A stretch of 47,221 nucleotides of DNA from Ministeria vibrans ATCC 50519. Taxonomy: Eukaryota; Protista; Filasterea. The DNA is taken from contig CALSCP010000597.1 in assembly GCA_943704425.1 (NCBI GenBank), positions 1 through 47,221 of the forward strand, read 5' to 3'. Shown piece by piece: positions 10,228-47,221 of the stretch (its first letter is position 1; the number at the start of each line of letters is the position of its first letter). The notes beneath the pieces were generated by a model. The model was not told the DNA's origin. It was given only the letters and a program-made list of their open reading frames with translations, and did no database searches. A program made the translations under genes and the position numbers.

Positions 10228-10866
10228 CAGAGGTTGAATTCTAAACGTTTACGACTGTCCTTTACATTTCCCCTCCAGAGTATACCATAACTGTCCTTTC
10301 ACTCCTTTAGTCTTTACTTCTGACCCACACTTACTGGTGTTTTGGTTTTTCATAGTAGTACTACGAGTACAACCCATTTTCTTTTTTGCGCTGGGGGGGG
10401 GGGGGGGACTTACAAAAACAAAAAAAACAAGTACCTCTGACCCGCCACTGTCCGCTCCATGCGACATATAGTCTATAGAGGTTTAGTTGAGTTTCAAGAC
10501 GATCTGAGTGTGTTTTCGCATGATAACTGTATCATTAAGAAATGGTGTGTTCTTCTCAACAGTTAGACGTGAATGAATAGATTCTGAATAGACTCAAAGA
10601 AGAGAAGAAAGAACAAAAAACGAGAAATACAAACACACAATGCTTCTGCCGTACACGATTATTTCGTGGCCATAGACTCAAGCGTGACTTGATTCTTTGG
10701 ACTTACTTTGGGTGATTGGAATTTTAGAATATTGTTCATTTTCCTCACTCATCAATCTTACTCAGTTAGTAGTGTACATAGTTCTACTTAGAACTTACTG
10801 ACCTTAGACTTAGTGAACTTACTCACCTTTTTTTTAATACATCAGATCAAGATACATCACGGGACC

Positions 10867-21486: not shown

Positions 21487-21532
21487 GGTGTTCAAGACTT
21501 GTGTATTGTAATGAGATGTAAAAATAACATAA

Positions 21533-22378
21533 TTATTCTTGTGCTGTTCTGATGATCTTTCTTAATTGATAATTCTTACTCCGTACTCCGTACTCTCGGG
21601 CAATGTAAAGTAAGAAGACATCTACAAAGTGATTGAGACAATGAACCATCTGTTTCATTGCGCTTGAAACGCCCTGCGTACCGGGTTGTGGCGTACACAT
21701 GGCCTCAGGCATCACAGAGTTGACAAATAACACAACGTGATCGCCTTGACGCTGGACACCTCGCTTCTTTTTGATGACAGTGACAGAGAAGAGAGTGGGC
21801 TTTGCGGTGATGGGATGTATTGACTCCCATGAAGTCCACAGGAGGTTCTGTCGTGGAGAGTCCTTCAAAAACGTAGATATCCCACCACCAGCCGGGAACA
21901 GCTCGTTCGCCCGCGAGTAGGTCATGCGAGAGGTCAGAATATACACAGGCTGACTCCCTTCCAGTCGTCTAAAATCTGATTGTTTAAATGGCACTCCCAG
22001 CACACTTAGCGTCTGACCAAACTCTTCTGTGTCCCACCCTACGCAAAGAATTAAAACGGCATCCTTGACAACGGATAATGTTGTTCTTGTACTGGACGGG
22101 AACGAGTCAGCAGTATGCAACGCGAGACGCTGAACTTTCGCGTAGAGTGACAGGTGAATTTTCTCAAGAAATGCGTCAAGCGATGTAGCATCGGGCGGCA
22201 GCTGGAGGGGTAGCAATACGTCGTGTTTGTAAATGCTCCACAAGGCAATAGAGGAGGGCACATAATTGGGAAGAGCAGCTGCGAAAACCAAATCCAAATC
22301 GCGTAAGCGTAGTTCAGGCATTACAGGCGCTTCTTCCAGCTCATGAACCAGCTCATCCATCTCATCCGGATCATTCAT
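21533..22378 (-). CDS. Intronless orphan protein, 281 aa
   Basis: Long ATG-started ORF with globular composition; no motif recognised. Confidence 0.6.
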   Translation of the reverse strand: MNDPDEMDELVHELEEAPVMPELRLRDLDLVFAAALPNYVPSSIALWSIYKHDVLLPLQLPPDATSLDAFLEKIHLSLYAKVQRLALHTADSFPSSTRTTLSVVKDAVLILCVGWDTEEFGQTLSVLGVPFKQSDFRRLEGSQPVYILTSRMTYSRANELFPAGGGISTFLKDSPRQNLLWTSWESIHPITAKPTLFSVTVIKKKRGVQRQGDHVVLFVNSVMPEAMCTPQPGTQGVSSAMKQMVHCLNHFVDVFLLYIAREYGVRSKNYQLRKIIRTAQE

Positions 22379-28191: not shown

Positions 28192-28594
28192 TCAGGGCAA
28201 TCTTTTCACAGCGTGGAGTGCAGGAAAGGACGCCCAAAGAGGGCTGTGACGAAACTCATAGAGGATTGCGGTGACAAAACGCGACGGGAGAAACTCGGGC
28301 GCAACCTAAAGACATACCAATTATTATTGTAATTATATGTGTAGTACGAATACCGTCTCGTCGGGTGCTTCTTTAATAGCACTGGCACTGAGCATGTCGA
28401 TGGCTTCGCGCGATTTGGGACGCAGGTGCACAGGTCGATTGCTATGGAAAAAAGCAGCATATGAACAACGACACTCCCTCGCATACACACTCTACCGAAA
28501 GTGGGCAATGTACGCAAAGGACGACTCAACAGGAGTCTGGCGAGTCCAATTGGTGTCACTGCGCGCACCTGTCTCAGTCAGAACCCGATGGATA
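28192..28594 (-). CDS. 3' end of a gene: three frame-compatible exons (28594-28496, 28441-28354, 28305-28192)
   Basis: GT-AG introns give ..IHRVLTETG..YIAHFRNRPVHL..VAPEFLPSRF..KRLP*. The upstream exon is not identified. Confidence 0.55.
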
Positions 28595-28596
28595 CT

Positions 28597-28726
<130 letters not shown>

Positions 28727-28867
28727 GGTAGGGTTAGAGAGGGAAAAGGCAAAAAAAATATTATATCAAAAACGTAAAAATAATAATAATAATAATTATT
28801 ATTATTAATTTATTAATATTATTAATATTATTATTATTATTATTATTATTATAAATTATTTCCTTAC

Positions 28868-31800
28868 TCATAATAAAAACGCGACGGACGTCCGCCGTCT
28901 CATGCGAATCTACTCGTTGGTCAGTCCACACATCCTTGAGATTCGCCAAGGCCGTCGCCGGGCTGGTGCCCTCATCAAAGGTGAACATGTCGAGCATAGC
29001 CTGTCCAATGGCATTGCTAAAGGGCTGGTCCAGTGCCTTGACAACACTCTCTCGTCCACTTGTGCCAAAGCGCGCTACTGCAAAGGGCTGCTCGGCACGT
29101 CGTAGTGCCTCCACAAGTACTACGATCGCCTCAAACATGCGATTCTTCTGACACTGCATCGTTCCCGAGTTGTCCACACACAGACACCATTCAAAGCTGA
29201 TGGGATGCTCGCGCGCCAGCAACAAGGACGACGTCGTCTGAAACAACATGACCAACGACTCGACCATGGTGACGACCTCTTTGACGCCAAGCAACCGCGA
29301 AAAGGTCCAGCTTTCCACCTGATGTGCCATGTCTTCCGTTACAACACCCTCGAGCCGCTGTAGCCGACCGCTCGAGGGCTTTTCAGCACGCACCGTACCC
29401 CGAAAGACCTCGTTCAGATCCGCATCGTGGTTCTTGTCCACCAGTGCCGATGCCGCCATTTTGATCGCAACCTCCTTCATCTCAGTATTCTGTTGCACCA
29501 CACCCGTCTCCACAACCGTATCCTCCACCGCCTGCTCGCACAAGTGTTGAATCGACGGTGGCAAGAGTATGTCATCCCCTCCTCCATGACTAATGTTGGG
29601 CGCATCCAACTTCGCCTTCTCCTCCCTCTCCTCCGCCTCTTGCCTCACCCGCAGTCGGTTGCGTCCACGCTGCTGCACGGCTGCCGAGCCGGTGACTCCG
29701 TCGTCGACAACTCCCATGCTTTCCACACGAGAAAAGTCTACCGCAAAGGCGTCCTCATGCATTGCAAAGCCATGGTCCTGCTGCACTGCCACAGCGACTG
29801 CCATCGCCGGGTTCACATCGGGCATTGCAACCTGATCTCCGTCACCCCCAAACACTTGGGAAAGCGCAGTCGCCTCTATCTCAAGGTCTAAATCAACTTT
29901 CAGGTGGGCATGGTGCTTGGGCATATCCGGAAAAGCATCATCCTCGAGCTCAGGACGGTCGTGGCTCGCACCTGCCTTGTTCGCATCAATGTCGCTCCCG
30001 GACAGTTTGAACGGTAACACTGCACTACGACTCGTGGCCAACGCAGAAATGTTGAGCATGTCAAATGCGTCCTGCATGTCCTTGGCGAGTCTTTCGCGGG
30101 GCACTTGCGACAGCAGGTGCTTCACAGGCTTGCCCAAACCGCGCAACAGTTCGCTCGCACACGTCTTCTCGCTGAACGACACCTGTCCCAGCAACTCCAG
30201 CTGCATCGCCGCTGCCTCGATCACGCGCAACAGCTTCAAACCAGTCCACAAGTAGCGTACACTCTTGTCAGTGGACATTTGGCCGAGTTGCGCACCCAAG
30301 CACATCGGAACAAACTTGGATTCCCACAGTTGCGACGCTCGCTTGATCAGAGGCATTGCGTTGACCAGAGTCTCCAGGCTATCCTTTGTCACAACTTCTT
30401 GTTCCACCTGCATCATTTGCATGACCACACTCACCAGGGAGTTCATCTCCTGCGTGGTCGCTTTGACACGCAGTAGATGTGCCGCTTCCATTTCCTCCGT
30501 TCGAGCACTTTTCGTCAGCGACGGTGGCGCCAGACTCTCCTTTGACGCGCGCTCGCCTCCGGGCAAAATCGTCTGCACGACGATAGGCTTTTGCTCGGGA
30601 AACGCGATCCAACGGGGGGCCAGTGTGGTCGACAAGACTCCACTTCCGTTCATGGCTAAATATGTCGCCATCTCCCTCTCAGTAGCGCCAAAAATTCCAG
30701 ACATCCTGCGCACATCGTCATTTGTCTCGCGTGTCTCCGTAGTTGAGACGCGCGCTGCTGCTCCATGGACCAGGCCAAATCGAACCGTCGGCTGCGCCCG
30801 GACTACTTTTACGCTCGCGCTCCTCACACTGCTTCCTCCTCTTCCTCGCGCACTCCCATACAGCTTGGCTGTTCCCACAGCCACTCCGACAAGCGACAGT
30901 GAAGCACTCAGCGGAGATTGAGCTGTGAGAAGAGCAGCGGCATTCGAGACAATGTTCGACACAGTCAGTTCTTCGCCTGTGATTCGCATCACACAAGAAA
31001 GACAGTCCAGAGCCGCCGTCACAGCCTCGCACACACCTTCGCCGCGGTTAAGCGCCTCACTGAGGGAAACTACCGCTCGGTAAAGATGCGACGCCCTGCA
31101 CACAATTTGACCGGGCTCGCCTGGGAGCAGAGTGAGTCGTCGAGCGACCGCGGCAAACTTGTCAGCAAAATCGCCTTCGTGAATCATCTCCGCGATACTC
31201 TTGACCTCCCTCACCGCCAAAGTCAGTCCACCCGCCTTCTCAATGTTGGCAGTTCGAATGAGTTCTGCCACTGCGTCCAGCATGTCAATAGGTGCGTTCG
31301 CCTCGACTGCCCTAATCAAATTGCGCACAGTCACCGATACTTGGAGTACACTCCAATCGAGTCCCGCTGCCGCCGCCATGCCCTCCATTACGCCCAACGT
31401 ATCATCGACGCTTACATCACGTGTCATTTTGACAATCAAGTTTACCACTTGATGTACCTTGGCGCGCTGCTTTGGCTCAAACACAATCGCCATCCCAGCC
31501 GCAGTTTCAATGGCATTGCGCGTACTCAGAGGACCCAGCTGCGACACTGCCATCAGGTTTGTCAAACGTTTTACAGCGCGACTCATGCGTGCGGCAGCTA
31601 CTCGCGCACTATCAGGAAGCACAATGCCAATCAATGCATCCGCGTAATGCAGCGTGTGAGGAACGTCGCCGAGCGACGCCTGGTTATACACGTGACCAAA
31701 ATTCCGCAGCACCTTCATCGCCTTTGCCTCGTCCGCAATACCAAGCTTCAACTGAAACATCGCCTTGACTCGGGCGTCAGAGGAAGGTTTCATACCCCAG

Positions 31801-34800
31801 GTTTCGATGAGTTGTGGCTCGTCTTTCAAGATGCGAGCAATCTCCCGCACCACTTCGACACCAAGGGGTCCCAGACGATCACCAGCAAGAAAGCTCATCA
31901 ACTGCCCAACATGGTAGAGCAACTCGTGGGTGCCCATTGCGCCCTCGTGACCGCGCAGCAGCTTGGCTGCAACGCGACCAATGTTCGCGCCACGCGTTCC
32001 ACCCATGCCTAGGACACCTTTGAGTGCCTTGGCCGCGACCACAGTACCCACATTGCCATCCAGAGCATGATCAGCCGCTTGGAACATGCGCTGTACCATT
32101 TTTCTAGCACTTTCGTCGACGGAAGGCAGGCCGGCAGCGCGAGAAATGTGCTCCACTGTTGCCAACGCGTCGCTTAGTGAGTCGACATTGGAACGCAAGA
32201 GCCTTTCAATTTCCTGCGTTACTCTCCTGGCTACACACGACTCGTGCTCACCCAGCGTTGTTGCAATGCTTCGCACGGCCTCCAGCAGTTTTGTAGGCGT
32301 AAAATGCACCGTCGCGTCTCGCTTGGTCACATCAGCCAGCAGCTCAATGGTCTCGCCGTACTCCAGCTCTCGTGGCAACACGGAATTCAACAACTGTCCA
32401 GCGCTCCGCACCATAGCAGACACGTTCCTCATGGGCTCCGTTGCTGCAGCCTGTAAAAACTCATCTGCCAGCGCGCTTGAGCCATCAAACCTCTCGCGGA
32501 TGCACCTCTGGCGGTCTTCAACGGTGAGTAGAGCCCCAATCTCCTCGTAATGATGGCAAACATTCTCAAGAGAGTCGAGGGAACGACACGCACTGGCTCC
32601 CAGTCTCGCTCGGCCACCACCCACAGCTGCGAGCGTCTCGATCACAAGAGAGAAAAGCTCCTCTTGCGCTACTGACGACGCATCGACGGTCATCAGAGCG
32701 TACACCAACTCCCCAGCATTTATTGACTCCTCGGTGCCGCTCGCCAACAAGACACCCTTGATCACACGAGCAGCAGCAGTATCCATCGTGCCATCCTCCA
32801 ACATCTCCTTCACCGCCTTGAGCGCCTCCTGTATTGCAAATTGCGCTCGTCCACCAACACGCTCACTGACCAACTTCTTCATGCCGCGCCACGTCTCGCG
32901 TCCATTGCCACTTGTCAACTGCTCCAACTGAGGCTCACAAAATCCGTCCACGAGACCACACATAATCTGATTAGCATTCTGCGCGAAGAGTCCGTTAATC
33001 AGGTTGAGCACGGTGTTGCGTTGGCCCTCGTAGTGCATCGCATCCAACGATAGCCTTGCCAGCAGCAGTTTGCCCTCGCGTTCATCATCCACATACACCT
33101 CCGCTGACTCGAGAAGACGCTTTGCGAATTGCATAAAGCGCTCGCTGTTCTCATTCGTCCTGTGTGTCTGACGTACCACGTCTGCCACCAATGTGAAACT
33201 GGCATTCAACTGATAATCCTGCTTCAGGATCGCATCAAGCTTCGCCTTGATCACATCATGGGTCTTGAACGCCTTCAGTGCATCGACATACGCCTTTGCG
33301 CTCTGCGACGATCCCTGTGAGTTGGTTGCGTGCACCAAAAGTGCATCGGCGTGCACGACAAGTTGCTCCGACGCACCCACCGCACCAACACAAAGCAGCT
33401 TGACCATCTCATCGTAAAGTGGAGCACTCTTTTCCAGCTTGCAACCCATTGCCTTGAGAGCCGGTGGAAGAAACATTGAGGGAGGGCAGTCAGCAGAGTC
33501 TGGACCACCAATCAGACTTCGCAGCGAGTTCATCGCTTGCGTCACGACAGCCTCCGATACACCTTGAAAGCGATGAAGGGCCTGTAGCAAGGCCGTCTCG
33601 CGCGATAGGTGCCGAATGGACTTGTAAAAACCTCCCGCTCCTCTTTCTCCTTCTGATTGTCCGTCAGTCCCAGCGGCCTGTTCATATACCATGCGCACCA
33701 TCTCCGTAGCGACTGCCAGTGCCACATGGAATGGCTTTCCCTCGCGTGCACCACCCTCGCCGACGAGCCATTGCAACCCTGCCACGTCGCCCACTTCCAC
33801 GTTGTCCCACACAATGACTTGTTGAAATAGAGGAGTGGTGGGTGGCCGTTCGACATCTTCCACCACCTTACCGTGCACCTCAAGGCAAACACAATCTTTA
33901 GACACCTTGCCCTCCTTGTCAAACACATAAGAGTTTAATGACTCCAATGTAACGGTAAAGCTGAAGGGACCAAGAGGCAAGCCAGAAGCATCGACACACG
34001 CCACAATATTCTTCGCTGTACCCTCCTTCACTGCGAGACCCACAATCTTGCAATTCGATCCGTCCTTCAGACGAATCTCCTTGTTCCCTCCCAAATCCAG
34101 CCACGCGTACCCGCCAGTGCCCTCGTGAGGAGGTACGTCAAGGCGACACGTAGCATTCAAAAGAAAGTTCCCAAAGTTGGAGATGAGAATCGTGCTCGAC
34201 CTGGATGTCAATCCCAGTGGTATATCGCCCATGTGAACAAGCGCAACCGGTGTGACGCGCATAATGGCCCGCTGAATCTTCACCGAGGCAGTCACGCTCG
34301 GTCCATTTTCACCAAGCTTCAAGAACCTGGGAAGCGATGAGCTGCGCGGTGGAAGTGACACAGGTGCGTACGTCAATTGGACGCTGACACGATTATTGTC
34401 TTTGCCCGAGGGCACCCGTAAATTTCCATCCAAAGACCAACCCGAATCGTCGTCAAGCGGCGCCAAAAAGCCATCGACATTGCCTGTGTTCTCCACCACC
34501 AGAGCTTGCGATGTCACCCCCACAAATTTGCCGTCTTTAAACGCGCTCGTGTTCATGTCCTTCAGGTTCATCTTCAGTTCGACTTCCTGGGGCGAAATAA
34601 TCAACCGTGACTCACCGACGATCACACATAGCGACATGGATAACGAGGTGGGCACACCCGCCACCATGATTTGCAGCAAGAATTTTTTGGAGATTTCAGT
34701 ACAAGTAGTCTTCCACGCGCTTATGCGCAAAGGCAACGCACGGCGCGAACCCGCCCCAACCGTTCCACAGTTCAGCTCTGAAACGACATGGTTGTTGGGG

Positions 34801-37800
34801 TCGATGGACACCTTCACACATGCTGGAACAGTGCCCTTGTTGACAAGATACAGCGTGAGCTCACGTTCACCATCGGGACTCACTGCAATGCTTGAATCCG
34901 CAGAGGGAATACAAGAGTGATCACTTAGCACAATGCCTTGTTCGTCCTCAAGCACCACACGAGGCACAACCAGCTTGCCGATCACATCAAACTCGCGCAC
35001 ATTGTCGGCACTGCGCACACCCACAGCAAGTGAGCTAGACACATCCCAGCCAAGCTCTTCGTCCTGACGGTTCACTACTGACTCAGTCTTTTCCGGTGCT
35101 GTCGCTGGCGGCTGGGCCGTCAGCACAAAGGCGCGCGTCTGATGTGGTCGTAGGAGCATGTCTGTAAACGCAAGCTCCAGTCTGCAGGGTCCATTTCGAG
35201 CGCTGCGAATGAGACCCACGAGGCGTACCGGCACGTTCATCATCGATCGAACTTTCAATTCTTGCTCAACACAAGTCGAGCCAACGGCAATGTGACCAAA
35301 GTCAATCGTAGAGCGGTCAAACTCCACATGAAGTGGCTCCACCACGCCAGACAGATGGAGTTCCAGCTGGTGTTCATCGTCGCCCGACTCCTGCTCCGTC
35401 GTGTGCACATCGCTCTCACAACCCGCGACAATCTTCTCTGGATGGAGCGTCAGCTGAACACTAAACGCGCCACATGTATTGCTCGGCAGCTCAAAGGGCA
35501 CGTCCAGACTACCGCGTGAGGTGAGCACCATCGCTTCAGGGCTCGTGACAGACGTAAAGATCGACGAATCGTAGAGGCCACGCATCTTGAGGTGCACCGC
35601 GTCGCTCGTCCAGTTCTCAAAGCGCAACACACGACGGGTCGAGTCAGTGTGCTGAAGCACATAGCCAAAATCCACGTTAGCAAGCGCAGGGGAAAAGATC
35701 AAGTCGCCACTGTCAGTTTCCGTCAGCATCACAGAGATTTCGTTGGGGCACTTCACCTCGGCCAGTGGGTTCAGCACGTTGGCATCTTCTCCCTCACTCT
35801 TGTCCAGCTTTTCTTCCGCAACACAGTTGGGCATTGCGGAAGAAGCAGCAATCATTTCTGGGTCGACACTGACAATCTGTCGCATTTTCGAAATCATCTC
35901 TACACGCATTCGTTTGCGTGTCAGACAACTCTGAATGGCACGCTTAAAGGGCCGCACACGACTTTCCAGCTCCTGCCGCTCATTCGCAGACGGCCAGCCG
36001 GCCGACGCAAGTGCTTTGAGAGTCACATCCCAGTCGGACGATACATCAGCGAGACCTCTGGTGACAACGAGGGCAAGCATTGACAGTGTGCCCATGTGGA
36101 TCATCAGCGAGCCGAGCTGTCGCATCGCCTCTTCAAAACCTTTGATGGAGCTGACAAAGAACACGGAGCGAGATGTCGAAAATTCCGGGACACACACATT
36201 GTCCATCATGTGAACGATAGAAGCATTATCAAACGTCCTTCGCTGAAACTGAATGACAGAGTCAATGGGGCGGTTCCCGTGCCTGTCGGGCCACGGCTTT
36301 TTTGACGCCACAAAGGTCTTAATGCTCTTGTACTCTGCTGAAAGCTTCTCAATCACCGACACAAACGCCTCAGTCCTCTCCCAACAGACCTGTAAAGTCT
36401 GGCTCGTCGTCTCACCACTCGCTACGTCAACGGCGGCGACCAGTTTGTCGCAAAAGTCTGTGCCTACTCTCGAAAAGACAGCCAGAGACTCCTGAAGAGT
36501 TACAAAACCTTTTACCAATGTGTGCTCCTCCACATAGCTCTCGTCCTCTTCCCGCTGCAGCTGCAAATCCTTGTTCAAACGCTTTTCATAGGCAATAAGA
36601 CTTGAAAAGTTCATTCGAACCAGCGCAGCGGGTTTCACCAGCGGCTTGATTTTCGCCAAAGCAGTGCGCATATCAGAGTAGGCTTGACGAAAGCCTTCGT
36701 GGGTGCTGCGAGCATCAAAAAATGACTGACGAGGCGGCTTGGAGGGTGCCGGAGCGTGCGCTGTAGCGACGACAAGCGACGCCTGTCCAATTCGAGCATT
36801 CCGAGGGGCACTTTGTGAGGCGGCACTAGAGGACTTTCTCAGGTTGGCGCGTGCGTCGGCCGGGTTGACGCCGCCCAGGCCTGGCATCAAAACAGCACCG
36901 GCAAGGGGGTTGCGTTGAGCTCCGCGCTCACTCGTCCCCTCCTGTTTTCCGCTGACATCTCCAGAATCGCCAACAGAACCGGCTGCAACTGGGAGGTCGT
37001 CGGCAACGGAAGTCGATTTTACAGTAGCAGGCACTGTAGGCGGTGGGGGGCGAGGAGGTGCTGTCTTCGTTGAAGGGTTTGAAGATCTCTCCCGACCTCT
37101 CTCTGGTACGTCTTGAGCCAAAGAGGCGGACGATGAGTCTGCTGTCAATACACCAGCGCGCGGGCGATAAATGAGGCCCACAAACTCCGGGCGGACATTC
37201 AGCGTCGCATTGCCAGTGGTGAAAATTGAATGGGTTGTAACCACCAGTTTGATTGATGCCTTTGAATGGGCTTCGGATTTCAACTGGCGTAACGTATACT
37301 TGAAGCACCGGGAGGGGCAACGTTCGGCATTTGCGACGTACATTTTGGGCGCATACGCAACGTCAATGACAATTCTCCAATTCAGCGTGTGTCGAGGAAG
37401 ATCAAATTCTAACTCCCAAGCATTTTGTTTCCAGTTCTCCAGCTCACACACACGCTCGCTGTACACTCGCGTGTCCGTTTCCAACTTGACTGTAATCCGC
37501 TCAAAGCTGTGTCCACGCAAGCCCGTGAATCCGAGTTTGAGTGTTTTGAAAAAGAAGTAAAAAAGCTTGTTCCAAGAAGGGCCAGGGATGGTGCAGCCTT
37601 CGGGAAGGTGTTTCATGAGGTCTTTTCCAAGGGCAAGATCATCTTGAATCTCGTCGATGGTACCATTCATTTCGCGCTTCGTCGCCCAAGCATGAGCCAC
37701 GGAGAAGAAGCGCGCAGCCAGGGACGCGCAGTGTTTCACGTTCAAGGCACGCTGCTCCTTGGCATCCTCCCACGCCTTCTTTTCCTTCTCGTGTATTGTC

Positions 37801-40800
37801 CACTTCTGTTTTGCAGCAAGCAAATCGTGTTGAATCAGTTCTTCTCGACGCTTGTGACGCTTCTCGATGAGATCGCCCAAGAGCCCACGTACACACTTCT
37901 CATGCTCTCCAAGCAAGGTACTCAACGACTCAACAGTCTTCTTGAAAGCGTTGCAGCGAACAAGCTGCTGCTGGAGGCTACTCGCAACCCTTTGGGCGAC
38001 ACTGGAGAACATCGTGGACTCGAATTTTGCCAGAGACTCCATCAAGAGAGGCAATTTCTCCTCCAAAACACTCACAGGCGCTTGCAGTGTCTCCAACGCA
38101 AAGCCAGAGTGCTGCTTGAAAAGAAGCAGCAGTTCAGAGACGTCAAACTCGTGCGGCGACAAACTGTGCAGGCCACACAAGAGATGTGCCATGTCGGGAA
38201 CGCCGGATACAACAAGGTCGGCAGTTGCCCACGCACGCCCAAACCAGTCAAGAATGACTGCCTCGGGCAGCTGGTCTTTGAACTTGTTCAAGCGACCGTC
38301 ACTCACCGCCACGCACAACGCTTCGCGCACCTCCTTCAAATTGAGAGTGTCACTGAGGCGAATCTTATCCATGTCGGGATAAAATGCCCCCGTGCTCGGC
38401 ACCTCAACACCAGAGTCGCTTGCATCGCGTGGGTCGCACCAGTACGCCTCGGGACAGTCCATGCGGCTGCCCACAACAACCATACCCTCACGTGGTGCCT
38501 CCGTGAGCTGTTGCCACACTCCGTTCAAATCGCGCACGCGAATGTGCGAGATCTGTTCACATTGGTTGCGGAACCAGCGCGACTGAAGCAGCACCAGCGA
38601 CTCGAGCACACTCTTCGACAGAGTCCCGATGTGACCAACCATCTCACTGAAGGGAGCCCCAAAATTTTGACGCCGGATAGACATGTAAGAGCCCCAGCGA
38701 CGCGTCGCGTCAATAGCACGATCCAGGGCACCCTTTGTGATGGCACACACAAACTCACTTTCAGACGTCAACTGGGCGGGCACAGGCAGTTGGGCGAGAT
38801 CTTTGACAGCACCCAGCCACTCGACGCATTCTTTGATCTCCCGAGGGCTCAGCTTCTGTCGCCAGGCGAGATCTTTTAGTGTGGCCGGGGACTGCTGGCA
38901 GATCACAGTCTCATCGACTGAGAGTACCAAGCTCACGGAACGCACAGCAACTTCGCAAATTTGGTCCATGATGAACGATGGCCGCATCAGATGGTCATTG
39001 AGATTCTGCAGCACGTAATCGACATGTTGTACAACTGCAAAGGGCGACGAGAGATAGCCGTGCGCCAACATGATCATCGTGCGCGACAGTGCCTGACACA
39101 TGGTGGGCAGCTGACTGCGAAGTGAGTAGAAGGCTTGCTCAACAGCATCGTCACGAGTCGGCAAGTGTCCATTGTAGGCATCATTTTCGTGTTGTGCACC
39201 TTTCCACGCATCCAACTTGCGCTCGACAGCAGCGTAAATGTCACCAACGCCACTTCGAGCTTGAAGAAAACGCACGGAGACCTTGATGGACAGCGCCACG
39301 TAGACGTCCAGAGCCTTGATGCAAGCAAACGCAGCCTCCCGGTCAATTTCGACTGGAAGTTTCGCTAACTGGACCTCAAAGCGATCCTTTATCTGATGAA
39401 TCTTGTCGAGACACAGCAGTGCCATCTCGGCAATCTCTTGATGTGTCATGCGCTTGCGCTGGCGCACTGCGGCAAAAACAGACTCCATCGACTCGTAGAG
39501 ACTTCGTCGCATTTTTGTCAGTGCGCGTTGGTCATCGGTCCACGAGGGAATCAAATACAGTTGCTGGACCAGAGACGCGCGTGCATTCCAGCTCTTGGTC
39601 TGGTTCACTAGTGACACAAAACCCACATCAATTAATTGAACGAGCTTTGCAACGCCCATTCGAAGGGCATCGTCGGGTGCGAGTTGTCGACAGCACAGTC
39701 GAAGTCGCTCATGAAGTCGCTCGTGAAGAGAAGTAGCATCCTTCGCAAACACAGCAAGACGTTTGTCGTCTCCAACAGGCCACTGAACAAGATGTTTACG
39801 CACCAGACTCGTGACAAGAAGAAGCGCCTTAGCAAAGGAGTACCGGTGGGTGCCATCCTCGCCGAGTTGCCTGCCATCACTGCCAGCAGCAGCCGTAGCA
39901 GCAGCGACGGTGGCAGCAGCAACAGCCGCATCAATACTACCACAAGGTGCAAGCAATGCAATTCCTTCACGCACTCCTGCCACAACAAAGGTCCACATGT
40001 GGCACACATCATTAACAAAGACGGCGACATTCTCTACTGCGTCTTGAGTGAGTTGCGCACGCTCCTTCGCTTCGCTCTCGCGCGCTCGTTTCAGCTCCAT
40101 CGTGTGTGCCTTCACGTATTGCTGAATGTTGTGTTGTGCTACGGGGTCGGTGGAGCAAGTCGGATTGCCACGCGCCAAGCGCAAAGCTTTCTCGAGGCGA
40201 AGCACTTGGTTGGCTGAGGTAAAATTCATCTCTGAGCTCAGACGGATGGGAGACTTGTCGAGCACATGGAGGTCGCGCAGCTCACCGATGTGATGCTGGA
40301 GGCGGCTCGCCAGCTCGCGTACCGTTGCAAGCAGTGATAGTGACAGTCCAATGCTAGCAGGAAGCAAATCGGACAAATCGGAGGCAATTGCAGTCACGTC
40401 AGATCGGTCCAGGGCGACGAAAAGAATTTCTGGGAGAGTGCCGACAAGATTGTTGGCCAGACTGTCGCTGATTCCTTGACCAAACACGGGCAGGCGGCGG
40501 GGCGGCAGGGTACCATCCTGTACAGTGTAGGCAATTTCAGCGACCCCCTCATGCGCGAGTCTAGCGCTTGTGTTGTGAAACGCTGTTCTGTGCGCACTCC
40601 TAAAGGTGCTGAACACTTCGTCGGCGGGAACCTCGCCGCGCTGCAGACTCTTGTTGCATTCTTCCGAGAGCGTCCACAACATTTGCACAACATCCGTGCG
40701 CTCGGGGGCAAGCAGGGCAAACACGTCGCCCATGTCCAGGCTAGGTGGCTCAATGAGGCTCTGCGAAGCGGTGCCTGCGAGCTCAAGACACGAGCGAATC

Positions 40801-43800
40801 TGCAGCGCATGTTGAGCTAGACGACAGCCGTGCGTGTACACATTGTTCAGGACGGGCTGGTGGCTCTCGAGCCACTTGTCTGCGGGGCTACAGATTTGCT
40901 TCAGCTCCTGGTCGTTGCTGAGGTACATGCGCATCTTTTCGTCGGTGAGTGAGTTGAGGCGTGACATCACCTGCTCCTCGGCACAGGTCTCCTTCAGACG
41001 CATCTGACTCATCTTCTCACCGAGGTGCTGCTCGACAGCAAGCGCGACCTTGTCTGACAGAAGCATCCCCAGCGAGTGCATTTCATCAACCGTGTTCTTC
41101 GCCAACTCTGCACTGGTGCAGCTCAGCAGACGTGTGCAGAGAGCGGACAAGTCACGCCAGAGCTCGCGATTCACACGAGAGCGCAACAACCCACCGAGGA
41201 GGTGGGTACCGCTCAAATCGTGTGACAAAAGCGTCCGGCTCCAGTCACTGCCCGAGCGAACACAATGACTCATCTGATACATCTCATCGAGGCGCACTTG
41301 TAGCGCCTGAAAGTGTTCGTCGGCAAGATCACGTTTCGTTTCGCCATAACGCGCACTAGCAATGCCACCCACTCTAAAATGCGCTGGATCAAACACAGTT
41401 GCATTTTGAATGAGACGCGATGTGGCAAGAAGCGCGCTGTAGGGGACTTGCTGGTTTTGTTCCTGCGCAAACGCATTCAGTTTGGAAGCAATAAAATCGG
41501 GAAGAGCGTGGAAGGCCCGGACCTCCGAATCGAGAAGCAAGGCAAGACCCGACCCTTCCTGCAATGGAGACTGGGCAGAAGTCTCGTCGATCAACAGGGA
41601 GATGGCAGTGATCTTGCGGCGAATAAGAATCTTCAGCTGCATTGGTGGAGGCACCATACCACTCGCCTTCTCCGACAATTCCTTCAGGCGTGTGCAAACG
41701 TCGCGCAGGCCTTGGCTCCTTTGCTCGAGAGTCACAGAGCGACGTGCAATATCAGTGAACGGCTTTCGCTGCACGCTAGTACTTGGCTTTCGCCCTGGAG
41801 TAAGCACGTCCAACACGTCGACAAACACTTCGCCACTTCGACTGAGACTCTGACACTCTTCAAACAGCGGCGAGAGTGACAACAGCGCACTGCTAAGCTT
41901 GTGGTGGTCCATCGCCTCTTGAGACATCCCCACCTGACTTGCAACATCATTGATGCGCGCCTGCCAGTCGGCAAGCCACTCCTTTGAACGATTGAGAATC
42001 AGCTCAATTGTCAAACCGTCGCTGAAAAAAGTCTCGTCAAGCAGCGCAATCCGCAGCCCGCGAAGCATCGAGCAGGCGGACACCGACACATCCAAACAGT
42101 CCATCGTGCCTCTCTTTTTTGCCTGCACCGCGCGGAAGTACACTTGTTGCAGTGTTTGCGCAAGTGTCCACATGACTTCAACACACGAATGGTACAGCTC
42201 ATGCCGTTTGAGACGACCAAACTCGTCGTCAAAGTTCTTGAGGCGCGTCACAATTTTGGACAAGATGGGAAGAGTTGGGTACTTCTTCTTGAGGTTGGTC
42301 ACCGAAGCGTACAGCTTTGCATTGTAGGGCGTTCCATGCATGCTCTCCGGCATAATATCCCGCAAGGCATGATCGCGGAGTCGCTGTACCTCGGTCAAAG
42401 CAGCCGGGGACAGTTCGTTGGAGAGCAAGTCAATTTCCTGCGTAAAGGACGAGCAGTGTTGTTGCAGCTGTGTGACACTCCAGCCAGACACGTTCAGCAG
42501 TTTGTCATACACATGTTCGGTCGACAAAATCTTGCGCTGGATGGTCGCGCTAAAATGGTCAGTGGCCATGCGTGATGACTCACGTGGAGACATGCTCAGT
42601 GCACCATCGCGAAGTGTCGTCACTAAGCGCGTGACCCTTGCAGGATTGAGGGTGTTGGAGAGCAAGCGAAGAGCCGCAGTGGCAATAGGCGGGCACGCCA
42701 AGCCGCCCATTGCAGCAACGGGCGCGTCCACTGCAACCTCGAACACACTGCTGTTAAGCACAACTTGAACATCCAGCAGGAGAGACAACTGGCTGGCAAA
42801 TTTGGTGGACCAGGAGTCGCGCGTGGCCGAGGATTCGATTGGAATGTGATGTGTGATTTGGAGGGCAACGCTCCCACGGGAGGTGGTTGCCTCGAGAAAG
42901 AACACAGAGAGCCCAGCATTCTGGGGCGCCAGACGATCATGTAAAATCACCACATTGAAAGGGTGATGGTCGCCGTGGCTAGCGCGCTGGAGTAAGATGT
43001 TGAGGTGCTCGTGCAAGAAGACAGCAAAGCCCTTCTCTTTCGTTCCTGTGGTAGTGACATGAACGGACGTTGGCTGCCTGGCAGCGGACGGGACTGCAAA
43101 GAGAGCGCCTACGGCAAACCAAAGTACAGGTGAAGAGGCGTCCTGAAGCAGCGCTGAGTAAGCAGACGCGGACACATTCACGGCGTCAATGTTGCCTCGC
43201 GCACCCTTCAATCCTTCCACGAGCGAGATCAACTCATTCAACTCCACCGTGTTACATTGCTGGCGCAGCAGACGAAAACTGTCTCTGGACCCAAGCTCGT
43301 CAATCACAGAGAAGTTGGTTTTCCAACTGAGCTGCAGCGCAGCCGACTCCTCAGCATAAACTAGGTCATCGTCGTTTTTACTTTCTGCATCCCGCTTCCG
43401 GCAAATTTCAAGTACACTCTGGCGGAGTTTGCCCAGGTGAAAATTCATTTCAGTGACGAGTGCCACGATGGACCTGCGTGCTGCGGTGTCACTCTCAGCG
43501 GTCAGTTGACCCAATCGTTTTGCCGTGTCAAAGCGCGCAAGCTCATTGTCGAGTAAGTCCATCACGGTCACCAGCTGAGCTTGCAGGGATTCCATACTGC
43601 TGTTCAACGGTCTCTGTAAAAAGTTCATCGCGCTGGTCCAAACCCGGATTGCTTTCTCGTCCACATGCTGAACAATCGTTCTGTTGTCGGTGCGCAAGGC
43701 AGACCAGCGGTGAAGCAATTCAGTCGATCGTAGTTCCACCTGGTGAAGCTGTTCCTCCGACTGGGACGCCTGCACTCGCAGCTGTTGTACGTTGGTCGTC

Positions 43801-46800
43801 CTCGCTTGCAGGCGTATCGAGAGATCCTTCAGATCCACCAACACTTGTTTAGAAGATTGGAGGGTGCCCTGCAGCGTCTTCATTGCATCGTCAAGGGCAT
43901 CCAGCAAACAAAGATTGCGCACGTTCTCGATGGTGGGAACCACAGTGGTGGAGGTCTTGTCGACGGGCGGGAACATGATGTTCTCGGGTGTAGCCAGTGC
44001 GAGCTCCCAAAGCACCTGCTTCCACTCGAGTGTGCCCGCAAACGCCGACAGGGCTTCCACCACAGGCGTGCTCTTGATTTGGCGCAGAAGCACGAGCGCA
44101 ACGGAGCGGCGCGAGTTGGCCGACTCGAGCATGGGACGCTGAAGCTCACGCGAAAACGCAATCGTAGCGCTACGTTCGCCAGCGTTGCTCACCTCTCTGA
44201 CGTACGCCTCGTGGTCTTCCACAACGGTGCGATGTGTAAGTGTGGAGAGATGGTCTTTGACGGAGCAGGTGCAAACCACAATGCGAAGCGCGTTGGTGAG
44301 CCTCGTCATGGCGTCACGAAACTGAGACGGCGTACGCGAAGTGCTGTCGCGCTCAAGCAACGGAGAGTGATTCATCGCGGCAAACAGCTGCGATGCGGAC
44401 ACCTCGACTCGCTTGACGCAATTGAGGCGTTCAGCTGCGTCAAAGAAGGATGCTTGACGCGCAAACGTGAGAAGAGTCTCGCGAACATACGCTGCAGCAT
44501 CCAGCACCTCGGCAGTGGCCATCATCAAACGATCCGCAGTAGCTAGCTCGTTGCTACGCGCTGAATCATCAGCCAGTCCCATGCTATGCACGCACTGAAT
44601 CACCTCATTGGCTGACTTGAGAGTCTGCATTGCCTTGCCCTCGTCTGGCAGCAGCTGTCGCACACATTGATAGACTCGATGGGCGAGTCCCAGAGCTTCG
44701 GCGGCTGGACACACCAAGAGCAGGCGAGCAATGGCGTGGAGGGCCGTCTGCTCCAAAGCAACGCACGCTGGTCGCAGCTTGTCGCTCCACTGGATGCTCC
44801 ACTCGGGCTCTGTGTCGTGATGCAAAATGGGAAGCAGCTTGGCGCTGGCGGGCACTTTTTCAGCGGAAAGCACCTCAGAGAGAGCGCGATAGATGCAAAA
44901 CTGGTCGTCGGGATTGTTCAGAGCGGCCGTGTAGCAGCGGAGCAGCACAACGAGCATGGCGGGCTCCGGAAGCGAACGTGATGGACCACGAATCAAGTGG
45001 TAAGCCATTTCGCAGACGCGCATCAGGGAGCGCGCAGTCACGCCAAAGTTGGCCATGGGTGTAATCTTGTGTTCGGCAACAAGCTGCTTGACGATGGCGT
45101 GGGTGCGCAAGCACACATTCACAAGAAACTCGCCACCGTACAGACCACCAAACGAACCATGGAGGACCAGCGCCAAATCGTGCTGCGGAGCTTGTTTGCG
45201 GTCAACAAGACCCGCATCCAGTGGCAAAACATTGAGACGGATCACACGATTGACCATGGCACCTGACAGCTTGTTCGCGTGCACTCGACCGACATTGGAG
45301 GTGCAGAAGAGGCGAAAGTTGTCGTGAATACCACCGTTGGCACGCGACAAACTGCTGCCCTTGCTGTGCTCGTACAAGTTAAGCACCGGATCGGCCTCGA
45401 ACAGCGAGTTGAGACGTTCGAGCACTTCTGATGGCGCTGACGAAACGCTGTCCAGAAGGACCCACTTGCCGTCGCGCACCGCCCGCACAAACTCACTCTC
45501 GACAAACTTGAACACAATCTCGCCTTTGCCTCTGGACTTGCTCGCTCGCTCACTCGCCTTGAGCAGACTATCACGATGGCGCTCAATGTTCTGCTGGTGT
45601 CGCCGTGCAACGTGCGCCAGTATAGGATTCGACTGTACTTGCAGACATGCCCTGATGACATTCTCAAGAGCATTCGTGAGCGCAGCCGCCGCCTCATCGC
45701 GCTTGCGCGGCAAAGTCAAAACGTCGGCGTTGGGGAGGGCATTTTCTTTAGAGCAGGCGACAAAGAAATCTCGCTCGCAGTTGTGCACATCAACAACGAG
45801 GGTGAGGAGGGGTCGGCGATCACACACACTGACAGTGGTCGCAAACTGTACCACAACAAATTCCACAATCGCCTTGCACAGTGTTGTAGTGCGCGCCAGG
45901 CACAGCTCGTCGTGGGAGCTGTGCGACAGGGACGGCAGCCACTGTCCGATGAGGTCGCTCACTTCGCTCTCGTTGTTCAGCGACAGCATGAACACTTCAC
46001 GACGAGCAAGGCGAGCCAGTTCAAGCACAAGTGCGGTCTTGGCTGACGCGGTAGCGCCCTCGAGAAGAACAGGGCGTCGCGACTCACATGCGGCCGCCAG
46101 CATCTCAAGCGTGCTCACTGTACGCGGCGTGTGCACCAATGACTTGACAGTGTCATCGTGAAGGTGCGCCCGATCACCACGACTAAGGTAGATGGAACCA
46201 ATGCGAACCACGTCGTCGCCGCTCTGGTCGATGGACGAAGATTTGGGTAAGCAGCGTTCAAGCTCGGACGAAATGGGCAACTTGGCACGAACAATGTCAG
46301 CGACAATCGCCTGGTCCTTCTCGCTCATAAAGCTCCGCGAGTACACAAGCATTGCAGCCGCCTGAAGCGCAATGCGACGCACCTGACTGCTGCCTGGGTC
46401 TCCGTCGTCCTTGGGTACCAGAGCCTCAGCCTCCATCGTGACCTGCTCGGTAAGGTGGTCGATCGCGTCGACATCGTCCAATGGACCTTCTTCGTCTGCC
46501 ATTTTCTCTCCCGCACCACCCGTTGGCCGCACTTCTTTATCTTTTTCTTTCTCCTCCTCTGTTGGTACTTCTTCGGCGGACCGAGTGAGCATCTCGGCGA
46601 AATGCTCATTGTGGGTGAGCTGGTCCTTGGCCGTGTAGCGAATGAGGTCCTTCATCTTTCCCAGGTCACGCAGATTGAGGTCGTAGGGACCGCCAATGCG
46701 GCCCACATCGCGACGACTGACGGCTTCACCGACGGCACGCTGGAGCTCAAAAATCCGGCTCAGGTCGTCGTCGTCGACCACAACGGAGGAGGACGTCGCA

Positions 46801-47099
46801 AGAATGCCTTCAAACTGCTTGCGCACGACCAACTCCATCTCCTTTCGGTTGTACGCGCCCAGCTGAATGCGGGTGAACATGGTGCGAATGGAGCGAGGCA
46901 GTTGCCCACGACCACCGCCCGTCGACGTGGGGTTCATCGTCGCGACAATGGTCACAGCTCGCGGAATCTCCAGCTCACCATAGCCGGGCAGTGGGATTTT
47001 GCCCACGGCACGTGCATCGCGATCAAGAAGCGGTAGAATGCCGTCGAGAACTTCGTTCGGGGCGAGATTCAGCTCGTCAAATAGCAGCCATTTACCATC
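28868..47099 (-). CDS. Giant midasin-like AAA+ / Ig-like / vWA protein; one internal 18,232-nt exon; both ends of the gene lie outside this exon
   Basis: CAG acceptor at 47102-47100 and GTAAG donor at 28867. Midasin/MoxR-clade motifs GKWLLFDELN, ATMNP..GGGRGQLPRS, LLEGATASAKT, SDLIGQW, GKWVLLDSV..EVLERLNSLFE and HDNFRLF. Five Ig-like units; vWA motif CVDNSGTM near the end. Confidence 0.9.
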
Positions 47100-47118
47100 C
47101 TGTAACGAACGTGTCGAA

Positions 47119-47211
<93 letters not shown>
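47119..47211. repeat. (ATT)n microsatellite, intronic
   Basis: Directly visible. Confidence 0.97.
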
Positions 47212-47221
47212 TTTACTTTTT

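What the first reader, a model, noticed from the sequence alone, without database searches (positions are those of the whole stretch)
28868..47099. Giant midasin-like AAA+ protein with a re-built tail (Ig-like array, not the D/E-rich tether)
Seen: the 6077-codon exon begins mid-AAA, then has a module like midasin D6 (degenerate Walker A GATASAKT, Walker B DS, large helical insert), followed by about 5300 aa before the vWA domain. Known: Mdn1/Rea1 is about 5000-5600 aa in total, with six AAA modules, a helical linker, a D/E-rich tether and a MIDAS domain. Here the post-AAA part alone is about that long, contains Ig-like domains and lacks a long D/E tract. Inference: this is a midasin paralog, probably over 7500 aa, repurposed as a different mechanoenzyme (cytoskeletal, ciliary or defence role, by analogy to RNF213).
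Basis: partly seen in the sequence, partly recalled or inferred. Interest (0 to 1): 0.8.

Follow-up and report, generated by a model that had tools for sequence, protein, structure and literature searches.

The report
Giant midasin-sister AAA+ motor protein
This 18-kb exon is most of a roughly 8,900-residue protein from an old, patchily kept and apparently undescribed sister family of the ribosome-assembly motor midasin: it keeps midasin's six-ATPase ring and its metal-dependent gripping domain, but links them with a different, much longer tail that holds cilium-type Ig domains.

Summary
Window 47099..28868 (minus strand) is one uninterrupted 6,077-codon exon. It starts at the Walker B of an AAA_5 module, holds a D6-like module (GATASAKT / LLDS), then about 5,300 residues with no D/E tract and an array of ASH-type Ig domains. 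It ends inside a midasin-type MIDAS/vWA domain.

The missing 5' exons (about 2,750 codons, AAA D1 to the first half of D5) lie on contig C1380, so the protein has six AAA modules and about 8,900 residues.

The genome also has a canonical MDN1 (C2736: six AAA, about 650 residues of D/E, MIDAS) and a 9,600-residue sister copy of this gene (C1275).

In trees, the window protein falls in a clade of 36 giant proteins, split from midasins with full support. Members come from rotifers, a cnidarian, green algae, a haptophyte, a chrysophyte, a syndinian, a chlorarachniophyte and an amoebozoan transcriptome. They are collinear: AAA ring, linker, ASH, MIDAS, usually more vWA domains. They share one signature: D1/D3/D5 keep the catalytic Walker B, D2/D4/D6 do not.

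I found no paper describing this family.

The likely mechanism is inferred, not shown: a midasin-like ATP-driven puller acting on a non-ribosomal target. The window copy has lost the extra vWA domains, and its MIDAS may be impaired.

The parts
47100..47221 (-). 3' end of the intron before the giant exon: (AAT)n microsatellite and acceptor ttacag. The contig ends inside it.
   Evidence: The same intron start (AAAAAGTAAAAATAATAAT...) follows the exon end on C1380:11993.
46500..47099 (-). Second half of AAA module D5 (Walker B WLLFDELNLA at 47090-47061, catalytic Glu kept), its midasin-type lid, and an acidic spacer.
   Evidence: (AAA_lid_7 at residues 111-184). It complements AAA_5 profile positions 1-65 at the end of C1380 exon L044.
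45180..46142 (-). AAA module D6: Walker A GATASAKT (46058-46035), about 190-residue insert, Walker B LLDS without the catalytic Glu (45464-45441).
   Evidence: The same degenerate pattern occurs across the family.
37200..45179 (-). Post-ring linker, about 2,660 residues. No Pfam or PDB sequence relatives. 19-46% identical to the C1275 copy in 150-residue windows.
   Evidence: (only 4 weak hits among 1.84 billion proteins).
36690..37202 (-). Low-complexity Pro/Ser/Ala-rich hinge (PPRPPPP at 37058-37038). Poorly conserved between the two copies.
   Evidence: (14-19% identity, 28-43% gaps).
33840..35741 (-). Array of about five or six ASH/HYDIN-type (PapD/MSP-like) Ig domains.
   Evidence: Pfam below threshold: PF22544 at 7e-4, MSP at 2e-3, Cep192. 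All ten top named Atlas clusters are HYDIN/ASH/Cep192. All-beta AF2 model. The top 20 Foldseek hits are ciliary central-apparatus chains, E down to 7e-23.
29550..33752 (-). About 1,400-residue Ala/Gly/Leu-rich region between the Ig array and MIDAS. Presumed helical; no structure was predicted. No detectable relatives outside the family.
28869..29237 (-). First two thirds of a midasin-type MIDAS/vWA domain: VDNSGTM (29177-29157), FAVARFG (29084-29064), FTFDEGT (28985-28965). The exon ends in strand beta-4 (RRVFIM).
   Evidence: The model of the complete domain of the C1275 copy best matches human MDN1 and C. thermophilum Rea1 MIDAS.
28333..28868 (-). Tentative 3' end: donor at 28868/28867, an intron full of (AAT)n and (CT)n, candidate exon 28568-28496, candidate last exon 28441-28333 ending in TAA. 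These would supply beta-5, a helix and beta-6 of the vWA fold, but not the TDG metal-site strand.
   Evidence: No transcript data, so this is a model only. No further vWA similarity was found in the rest of the window.

Best explanation
The exon encodes the C-terminal two thirds of a roughly 8,900-residue single-chain hexameric AAA+ protein. It belongs to an old eukaryotic sister family of midasin (MDN1/Rea1) that I could not find described.

**Shown**
- The domain order is: a helical N-terminal region of about 880 residues, six AAA_5 modules, a linker of about 2,660 residues, a Pro-rich hinge, five or six ASH-type Ig domains, about 1,400 residues with no detectable relatives (presumed helical), and a midasin-type MIDAS domain.
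- Family-wide, D1, D3 and D5 keep Walker A and the catalytic Walker B Glu. D2 (DN), D4 (GPxSFKS / LEDF) and D6 (DN/DS) do not.
- The genome keeps a normal MDN1 as well.

**Inferred**
- It works like midasin. ATP hydrolysis at the three competent sites remodels the linker relative to the ring.
- The MIDAS at the tip of the tail holds a ligand's acidic residue through its metal ion, so the stroke pulls that ligand out of a large assembly.
- The target is not the pre-60S ribosome, because MDN1 is retained for that.
- The ASH array is the kind of module that docks proteins on ciliary, centrosomal or membrane-trafficking structures, so it probably sets where the machine acts.
- The window copy is a lineage-specific duplicate that has lost the family's extra C-terminal vWA domains.
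For: **Gene structure**
- Continuous coding exon.
- 5' exons on C1380, with an exact complement of the split AAA_5 module and the same intron start.
- Six modules and their motifs.

**Midasin is the closest known relative**
- The only solved relatives of the AAA part are midasins, E 1e-66, followed by NorQ at 1e-3.
- AAA_lid_7 hits.
- In the own genome, MDN1 is the nearest non-family hit.
- Midasin and this family share the split between odd and even modules, support 98/94.

**Separate family**
- A canonical MDN1 is present.
- Family versus midasin bipartition has SH-aLRT 100 in two trees, 19 vs 14 and 36 vs 7 rows.
- Mesostigma also has both a family member and a midasin.
- Members are collinear in AAA, Ig and MIDAS.

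**Shared features**
- The Walker pattern is conserved across 13 members.
- MIDAS: profile hit to Mdn1. The model has pLDDT 78, and its top eight Foldseek hits are MDN1/Rea1 MIDAS, E down to 1e-12.
- ASH array.
- The genome encodes at least ten dynein heavy-chain loci and a hydin-like array, so the organism is flagellated.
Against: - No experiment or expression data. The mechanism rests wholly on analogy with Rea1.
- Module-by-module orthology with midasin D1-D6 is not resolved. New D1/D3/D5 cluster together, and new D2 groups with midasin D4.
- The linker shows no detectable similarity to the Rea1 linker, so linker remodelling may differ.
- In the window copy the MIDAS has DxSxT rather than DxSxS. 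It is split by a microsatellite-filled intron, and no in-frame TDG strand was found. Its metal site may be defective.
- The cilium link is weak. The family is missing from the vertebrate, insect, fungal and seed-plant hits, which were midasins only. It appears in a Copromyxa transcriptome and in Apatococcus, neither known to me as flagellated (own knowledge).
Confidence: 0.65

Rival explanations
1. It is the organism's MDN1/Rea1 orthologue with a fast-evolving tail, still working in 60S ribosome assembly.
For: The AAA part hits only midasins in the PDB. AAA_lid_7 is found. The MIDAS is of midasin type. UniRef labels two family members 'Midasin'.
Against: - A complete canonical MDN1 with D/E region and MIDAS lies on C2736 and groups with animal midasins.
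- The window protein is outside the midasin clade, support 100.
- The Walker B pattern differs from Rea1's active AAA2-AAA5 (PMC11603028).
- No D/E tract.
- In the precomputed Pfam lists shown, PF17865 appears only in proteins outside the family. PF21108 also appears only outside the family, in many midasin rows but not all.
Confidence: 0.02
2. The window copy is a decaying or neo-functionalised duplicate. After duplication it lost the three extra vWA domains and damaged its MIDAS metal site, so it no longer grips a ligand the way the ancestral protein did. It may be a regulator, a scaffold, or on the way to loss.
For: - The C1275 copy and most family members carry two to three further vWA domains after the first MIDAS. 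None is found downstream in the window.
- The TDG strand, invariant in the aligned members, is missing from the only in-frame splice model. An out-of-phase stretch (HRVLTETG) resembles it.
- Microsatellites fill the intron at that spot.
Against: - 18 kb of open frame with uniform coding periodicity argues for continued selection.
- DxSxT and the FTFDEGT threonine are kept and are identical in both copies.
- D5 keeps its Walker B, and D6 matches the family pattern.
- An assembly error of one base next to the repeats could account for the phase problem.
Confidence: 0.2
3. The family is an ATPase-poor structural giant, for example a ciliary or centrosomal scaffold like hydin. Its ring is a nucleotide-binding hub rather than a force generator.
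For: Half of the modules lack a catalytic Glu. The ASH array most resembles static central-apparatus proteins. The tail is very long and has no recognisable enzymatic domains.
Against: D1, D3 and D5 keep canonical Walker A and B across distant lineages, which is hard to explain without hydrolysis. The MIDAS domain is conserved with its metal-binding residues. Dynein and Rea1 also work with several degenerate sites (established knowledge; PMC11603028).
Confidence: 0.1
4. It is a defence or stress sensor working like RNF213: a giant AAA+ core that recognises foreign or damaged structures.
For: It is a giant single-chain AAA+ protein with lineage-specific duplication.
Against: No E3, nuclease, TIR, death-fold or other effector domain was found by Pfam in any part. 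The family is old and collinear rather than fast-diversifying. No PADLOC-type search was run, and PADLOC covers prokaryotic anti-phage systems rather than eukaryotic proteins.
Confidence: 0.03

Closest known systems
Midasin (MDN1 / Rea1)
   Same: Six AAA_5 modules in one chain with midasin-type lids. Shared odd/even module split. A long tail ending in a MIDAS domain whose predicted fold best matches MDN1/Rea1 MIDAS. D6 degenerate in both.
   Different: Separate clade, with MDN1 also present in the genome. Competent sites are D1/D3/D5 rather than D2-D5 (PMC11603028). N-terminal region about 880 residues. Linker about 2,660 residues with no detectable similarity. No D/E tether. ASH array and, ancestrally, several vWA domains. 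An acidic Ser-rich insert sits inside D4 instead.
Dynein heavy chain
   Same: Single-chain hexameric AAA+ ring of the same MoxR-derived clade, with a mix of active and degenerate sites and a large mechanical appendage (established knowledge; PMC3495828).
   Different: No dynein was found by sequence against the PDB at E < 0.01. No DHC_N2 or stalk/MTBD signature was reported by Pfam. It keeps a vWA/MIDAS domain, which dynein lacks.
RNF213 (mysterin)
   Same: Giant single-chain six-AAA protein outside the two classical families (PMC11603028).
   Different: No RING/E3 module or other RNF213 domains found. No sequence hit. RNF213 has no MIDAS or ASH domains (own knowledge).
VWA8 and prokaryotic MoxR-vWA pairs (e.g. 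NorQ-NorD)
   Same: AAA_5-type ATPase functionally coupled to a vWA/MIDAS domain. NorD VWA is the next-best fold match after MDN1 MIDAS, and NorQ the only non-midasin sequence hit.
   Different: Those are single-module or few-module proteins forming rings by oligomerisation, about 300-1,900 residues. Here six modules are fused and a 5,300-residue tail lies between ring and vWA. The own-genome AAA_5 locus C1726, which I did not characterise, is not hit by this protein at E < 1e-3.
Hydin / CFAP65 / CFAP47 / Cep192-type ASH-domain arrays
   Same: Tandem ASH (PapD/MSP-like) Ig domains. Best structural matches are central-apparatus chains, and the best language-model clusters are HYDIN/ASH/Cep192.
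   Different: Only five or six domains, embedded in the tail of an AAA+ machine. Pfam scores are below threshold. No evidence of axonemal location.

Membership tests
Midasin (MDN1/Rea1) orthologue group | Six tandem AAA_5 modules in one polypeptide with midasin-type lids | tested here: met
   D1-D5a on C1380 exons, D5b-D6 in the window. AAA_5 and AAA_lid_7 hits.
Midasin (MDN1/Rea1) orthologue group | Groups with midasins in phylogeny and is the genome's MDN1 | tested here: not met
   Canonical MDN1 on C2736. The window protein lies in a separate clade, SH-aLRT 100.
Midasin (MDN1/Rea1) orthologue group | Catalytically competent AAA2-AAA5, degenerate AAA1 and AAA6 (PMC11603028; midasin rows) | tested here: not met
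   D1, D3, D5 keep DE. D2 has DN, D4 has GPASFKS/LEDF, D6 has DS. The same pattern holds in 13 family members.
Midasin (MDN1/Rea1) orthologue group | Long D/E-rich region before the MIDAS domain | tested here: not met
   At most 28 D/E per 100 residues, and not in the tail. Family members reach at most 38 per 100. Own MDN1 has about 650 acidic residues.
Midasin (MDN1/Rea1) orthologue group | Rea1-type linker of about 1,700 residues (stem, middle, top) | tested here: inconclusive
   hhalign of family versus midasin post-ring 1,300 residues gives probability 0.04%. No PDB sequence hits.
Midasin (MDN1/Rea1) orthologue group | C-terminal MIDAS domain with DxSxS...T...D metal site | tested here: inconclusive
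   Family and C1275 copy: met. The model best matches MDN1/Rea1 MIDAS, with VDNSG[ST]M, FTFDxGT and ITDG. Window copy: DxSxT and T are present, the domain is split by an intron, and no in-frame TDG was found.
ASH / HYDIN-CFA65-VesB-like Ig domain superfamily | PapD/MSP-like beta-sandwich repeats recognised by the family profiles | tested here: inconclusive
   Sequence profiles fall below the curated cut-offs: PF22544 20.2 bits vs 25.5, MSP 18.2 vs 25.9. At fold and feature level the match holds: all-beta model, top 20 Foldseek hits are central-apparatus ASH arrays, and all ten Atlas clusters are HYDIN/ASH/Cep192. Some family members have PF22544, PF22067 or PF15780 in their precomputed Pfam lists.
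New midasin-sister family (unnamed; e.g. Hydractinia LOC130614024, Apatococcus WJX74_002690, Mesostigma Mv01936) | Clade membership on D5b-D6, collinear AAA / long linker / ASH / MIDAS order, and the D1/D3/D5-competent Walker pattern | tested here: met
New midasin-sister family (unnamed) | Two to three further vWA domains after the first MIDAS | tested here: not met
   Present in the C1275 copy and in P0013, P0017, P0021. Absent from the window downstream of 28868.
VWA8 | About 1,900-residue protein with a few AAA_5 modules directly followed by one vWA | tested here: not met
   Six modules, 8,900 residues, 5,300 residues between ring and vWA. No VWA8 reference sequence was compared, because none was available from the tools.

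The most novel reading that the evidence does not exclude
This family is a fourth, LECA-age lineage of single-gene hexameric AAA+ mechanoenzymes, beside dynein, midasin and RNF213. It has an alternating-site motor (D1/D3/D5) and a tail that carries ASH domains and a MIDAS 'hand'. It extracts or installs a component of a cilium-, centrosome- or trafficking-associated assembly, doing for a cytoskeletal structure what Rea1 does for the pre-ribosome. Most model organisms have lost it, which would explain why it was never studied.
Probability: 0.3. Interest if true: 0.85.

Novelty: new variant of a known kind. Interest (0 to 1): 0.68.

Why it matters
A 2024 Rea1 paper (PMC11603028) names only dynein, RNF213 and Rea1 as AAA+ machines whose six modules are fused in one gene. 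This family adds a further, widely scattered lineage that keeps the ancestral pairing of AAA+ ring and vWA 'hand' but wires it through a different tail.

It offers three things:
- a natural comparison for how linker remodelling and MIDAS catch-bonding evolved;
- a test of whether a ring with alternating live and dead sites can generate force;
- a possible unknown remodelling step in ciliated eukaryotes.

The family occurs in Hydractinia symbiolongicarpus, which is genetically tractable (own knowledge), so its function can be tested directly.

For annotation, the labels 'Midasin' and 'MoxR-like ATPase' on these proteins are misleading.

Tried and rejected
- **First word search** over residues 1-5000: returned only four midasins matching the AAA part. 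It missed the family because too few words were shared.
- **Full HMMER search** of 1.84 billion proteins with a linker profile, residues 1950-3000: only four weak hits. The best was P0005, which did lead to the family. The linker is too divergent to serve as a probe.
- **C1688** as the candidate upstream contig: it holds a single-module MoxR-like ATPase and is not part of this gene.
- **Exact-sequence look-up** of a neighbouring gene to name the organism: nothing on record.
- **Atlas search** of the tail between Ig array and MIDAS: no usable hit.
- **PDB sequence searches** of the linker, that tail region and the C-terminal 744 residues: nothing. Only a two-sequence MIDAS profile reached Mdn1.
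- **hhalign** of family versus midasin post-ring regions: no similarity.
- **Self-BLAST** of the exon for internal repeats: none.
- **Splice models** that would place the TDG-like stretch (HRVLTETG) in frame: none works with GT-AG sites.
- **One-to-one orthology** of D1-D6 with midasin D1-D6: not resolved.
- **Careful tree**: did not finish in time, so the quick tree (SH-aLRT only) is what I cite.
- **Joined model:** Exons were searched one by one by reference.
Full report
**1. The observation**

The window is a whole contig (G000:C597) of a 29.7-Mb, 2,860-contig eukaryotic assembly.

- On the minus strand an open frame runs from 47099 to 28761.
- It starts right after an acceptor, ttacag|GATGG, which follows an (AAT)n-filled intron reaching the contig end.
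- The last usable donor is ATGA|GTAAGG, so the exon ends at 28868 in phase 1.
- The chance of no stop over this length is about 1e-114.
- GC at the three codon positions is steady (about 0.6 / 0.42 / 0.6) along the whole frame, with no AT-rich dips. The frame is therefore coding throughout, not an ORF with hidden introns.

**2. What the exon holds**

- *AAA part.* The first residues are a Walker B (WLLFDELNLA), then a midasin-type lid (AAA_lid_7). Next comes a module with GATASAKT, an insert of about 190 residues, and LLDS.
- *Linker.* About 2,660 residues follow with no Pfam or PDB relatives.
- *Hinge.* A Pro/Ser-rich low-complexity stretch.
- *Ig array.*
  - Pfam gives only sub-threshold hits: PF22544 at 7e-4, MSP at 2e-3, Cep192 domains.
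  - All ten best named Atlas clusters are HYDIN/ASH/Cep192.
  - A two-sequence AF2 model is all-beta; mean pLDDT is 54, and ten-residue block means mostly 56-85 (a few lower) over residues 40-410 of the piece.
  - Its top 20 Foldseek hits are chains of the mouse and Chlamydomonas ciliary central apparatus, E down to 7e-23. Generic Ig arrays such as complement, titin and cadherin come in near 1e-10.
- *Tail region before the MIDAS.* About 1,400 residues, Ala/Gly/Leu-rich and presumed helical (no structure was predicted), with no relatives.
- *MIDAS/vWA.* The exon ends in a vWA domain with VDNSGTM, FAVARFG and FTFDEGT. Pfam vWA models are below threshold. A two-sequence profile finds S. pombe Mdn1 MIDAS as its best solved relative (E 0.002).
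- *No D/E tract.* At most 28 D/E per 100 residues, and that peak is in the D5-D6 spacer.

**3. The rest of the gene**

A search of the genome with the sister copy's N-terminal part found collinear matches on C1380 (+), 42-73% identical. They end at 11984, exactly one position before the window exon begins.

- The last C1380 exon ends with AAA_5 profile positions 1-65; the window exon starts with the rest.
- The intron start after C1380:11993 (GTAAAAAAGTAAAAATAATAAT...) is the same sequence that ends C597.
- C1380 then continues with unrelated DNA, so the assembly is probably mis-joined in the microsatellite.
- The five C1380 reading frames add about 2,750 residues: a helical N-terminal region of about 880 residues, D1, D2, D3, D4, and the first half of D5.
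- With about 60 residues from two tentative small 3' exons, the protein is about 8,900 residues.
- I did not build or submit a joined model. Every exon was searched by reference on its own.

**4. Paralogues in the same genome**

- *Canonical MDN1.* C2736:42450-59609 is one 5,720-codon frame. It has six AAA modules, about 650 D/E-rich residues and a C-terminal MIDAS (CIDDSTSM).
- *Sister copy.* C1275 (minus, about 39,220-10,183) encodes a 9,600-residue sister of the window gene.
  - It is collinear with the window protein: 32% identity over 3,100 residues and 28% over 2,500.
  - Identity is 62% in the first 150 residues (D5b) and 46-56% in the last 230 (the MIDAS region).
  - Its MIDAS domain is uninterrupted and is followed by three more vWA domains.
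  - The window holds no such domains downstream.

**5. The family**

A word search restricted to D6, and another from the D3 of a hit, recovered about 40 giant proteins. They score well above midasins on the D6 query (246-374 bits for most named members, with two weaker at 206 and 124, against 224 bits or less for midasins).

Named sources:
- bdelloid rotifers (Rotaria, Adineta)
- Hydractinia symbiolongicarpus (LOC130614024)
- green algae: Tetradesmus, Hariotina, Apatococcus, Bryopsis (two copies), Mesostigma
- Prymnesium
- Epipyxis (a chrysophyte)
- Amoebophrya (a syndinian)
- Chlorarachnion reptans
- a Copromyxa protea transcriptome

Several metagenome contigs are labelled 'MoxR-like ATPase'.

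- *Collinearity.* Members match the window protein in order in the AAA ring, the start of the linker, the Ig array and the MIDAS.
- *Pfam content.* Some carry PF22544, PF22067, PF15780 and vWA in their precomputed lists. In the lists as shown, PF17865 appears only in proteins outside the family; PF21108 also appears only outside the family, in many midasin rows but not all.
- *Trees.* On D5b-D6, the family separates from midasins with SH-aLRT 100 (19 vs 14 rows; 36 vs 7 rows).
  - Mesostigma has one protein on each side.
  - The genome's own MDN1 groups with animal midasins.
  - The window protein and C1275 are sisters (100), which indicates a lineage-specific duplication.
- *Age.* The spread over Opisthokonta, Archaeplastida, Haptista, all three SAR groups and perhaps Amoebozoa suggests an origin near the last eukaryotic common ancestor, followed by many losses. 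No rooted species-tree reconciliation was done, so this is inference.

**6. Signature of the ring**

In 13 members the pattern is the same:

| Module | Walker A | Walker B | Catalytic Glu |
|---|---|---|---|
| D1 | GxTGVGKS | LLLDELN | kept |
| D2 | GxxGCGKS | LLDN | lost |
| D3 | GPAAVGKT | LADEFN | kept |
| D4 | GPxSFKS | LEDF | lost |
| D5 | GPPGIGKT | DE | kept |
| D6 | GxTxSxK[ST] | LLDN or LLDS | lost |

D4 also carries a long acidic, Ser-rich insert.

Midasins in the same analysis keep DE in D2-D5 and lose it in D1 and D6. [quoted passage not shown]

A tree of single modules shows a well-supported split (98/94) between odd and even modules, shared by both families. It does not resolve one-to-one orthology of D1-D6.

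**7. The MIDAS**

An alignment of the C1275 MIDAS region with 12 family members and the window piece gave a model with mean pLDDT 78 and most of the domain above 90.

- Its top eight Foldseek hits are human MDN1-MIDAS and C. thermophilum Rea1-MIDAS, including a Rea1 chain from a pre-60S particle (E 1e-12 to 5e-9; target TM about 0.7 for the isolated MIDAS domains).
- NorD vWA of the NorQ-NorD system comes next, then generic vWA domains.
- The family consensus is VDNSGSM ... FAVARFG ... FTFDEGT ... HRVxLMITDG.
- The window copy has T in place of the second S, as does C1275.
- It stops at RRVFIM, where an intron full of (AAT)n and (CT)n begins.
- The only GT-AG model that stays in frame continues with ...SARSDTNW..., which lacks TDG.
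- A TDG-like stretch (HRVLTETG) lies just upstream of that acceptor, but out of phase.
- This could be a real loss, a one-base assembly error beside the repeats, or an unusual splice. I cannot tell which without transcripts.

**8. How it most likely works**

Shown:
- a fused six-module ring nearest to midasin;
- three conserved competent ATP sites;
- a very long tail;
- an ASH array;
- a midasin-type MIDAS.

Inferred by analogy with Rea1 (PMC11603028; PMC6624252; PMC8837202):
- ATP hydrolysis moves the linker relative to the ring.
- The MIDAS binds an acidic residue of a ligand through its metal.
- The stroke then pulls the ligand out of a larger assembly.

Because MDN1 is retained, the substrate is probably not the pre-60S particle.

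ASH domains are typical of ciliary, centrosomal and trafficking proteins. The organism is flagellated, with at least ten dynein heavy-chain loci and a hydin-like gene. A cilium- or centrosome-linked role is therefore the best available guess, but a weak one: hits from vertebrates, insects, fungi and seed plants were midasins only, and two sources are not known to me as flagellated.

**9. Comparison with what is known**

I found no paper on a midasin paralogue family or on an AAA-ASH-vWA architecture in five full-text searches.

- A 2024 Rea1 paper lists only dynein, RNF213 and Rea1 as single-gene hexameric AAA+ proteins.
- Zhang and Aravind 2012 describe dynein and midasin as the two descendants of a MoxR-like six-module ancestor.
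- The searchable library is incomplete, so a description elsewhere cannot be excluded.
- The sequences themselves are already public, unannotated or mislabelled.

**10. Verdict**

- It is corrected in one respect: this is an old family, not a local invention.
- The function is inferred.
- The window copy is a trimmed duplicate whose MIDAS may be impaired.

Noticed in passing
G000:C1275:10183-39356 (loci L034-L037), minus strand: Sister copy of the window gene, about 9,600 residues. One 8,757-codon open frame plus a 5' exon. It has a complete MIDAS followed by three more vWA domains.
   Followed up: yes
G000:C1380:11993-21737 (L038, L039): After the upstream exon and its (AAT)n intron start, the contig continues with unrelated sequence, including a kinesin-like frame (LVDLAGSERV) near 21,200-21,700. 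This is probably a mis-join inside the microsatellite.
   Followed up: partly
G000:C1380:about 10,100-10,800 (L044 residues about 250-480): An acidic, Ser-rich disordered insert of about 230 residues sits inside AAA module D4, between Walker A and B. It is also present in P0005 and the C1275 copy. The family's acidic segment thus lies inside the ring, not before the MIDAS as in midasin.
   Followed up: partly
window 28496-28868 and 47100-47221: The introns flanking the giant exon are almost pure microsatellite, (AAT)n and (CT)n. The same repeats flank exons of the C1275 and C1380 genes. They fragment the assembly.
   Followed up: partly
window 16659-20156 (+): Single-exon 1,165-residue XPG/Rad2-type nuclease (XPG_N and XPG_I domains).
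   Followed up: partly
window 13847-15532 (+): Open frame with FG-GAP repeats (integrin-alpha-like).
   Followed up: no
G000:C1688:993-2315 (L026), minus strand: Single-module MoxR-like AAA_5 ATPase in a 441-codon frame. It is unrelated to the giant gene. I did not examine whether it is a eukaryotic gene or a contaminant.
   Followed up: no
proteins P0140, P0148, P0137, P0115, P0147, P0164: An early-branching set within the family includes Adineta steineri and Hydractinia proteins. Bdelloid rotifers also have members in the main group, so there may be two old subfamilies.
   Followed up: no
protein P0084 (Copromyxa protea transcriptome): This amoebozoan transcript is sister to the bdelloid rotifer sequences (98) in the family tree. 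That raises the possibility of contamination in the transcriptome.
   Followed up: no
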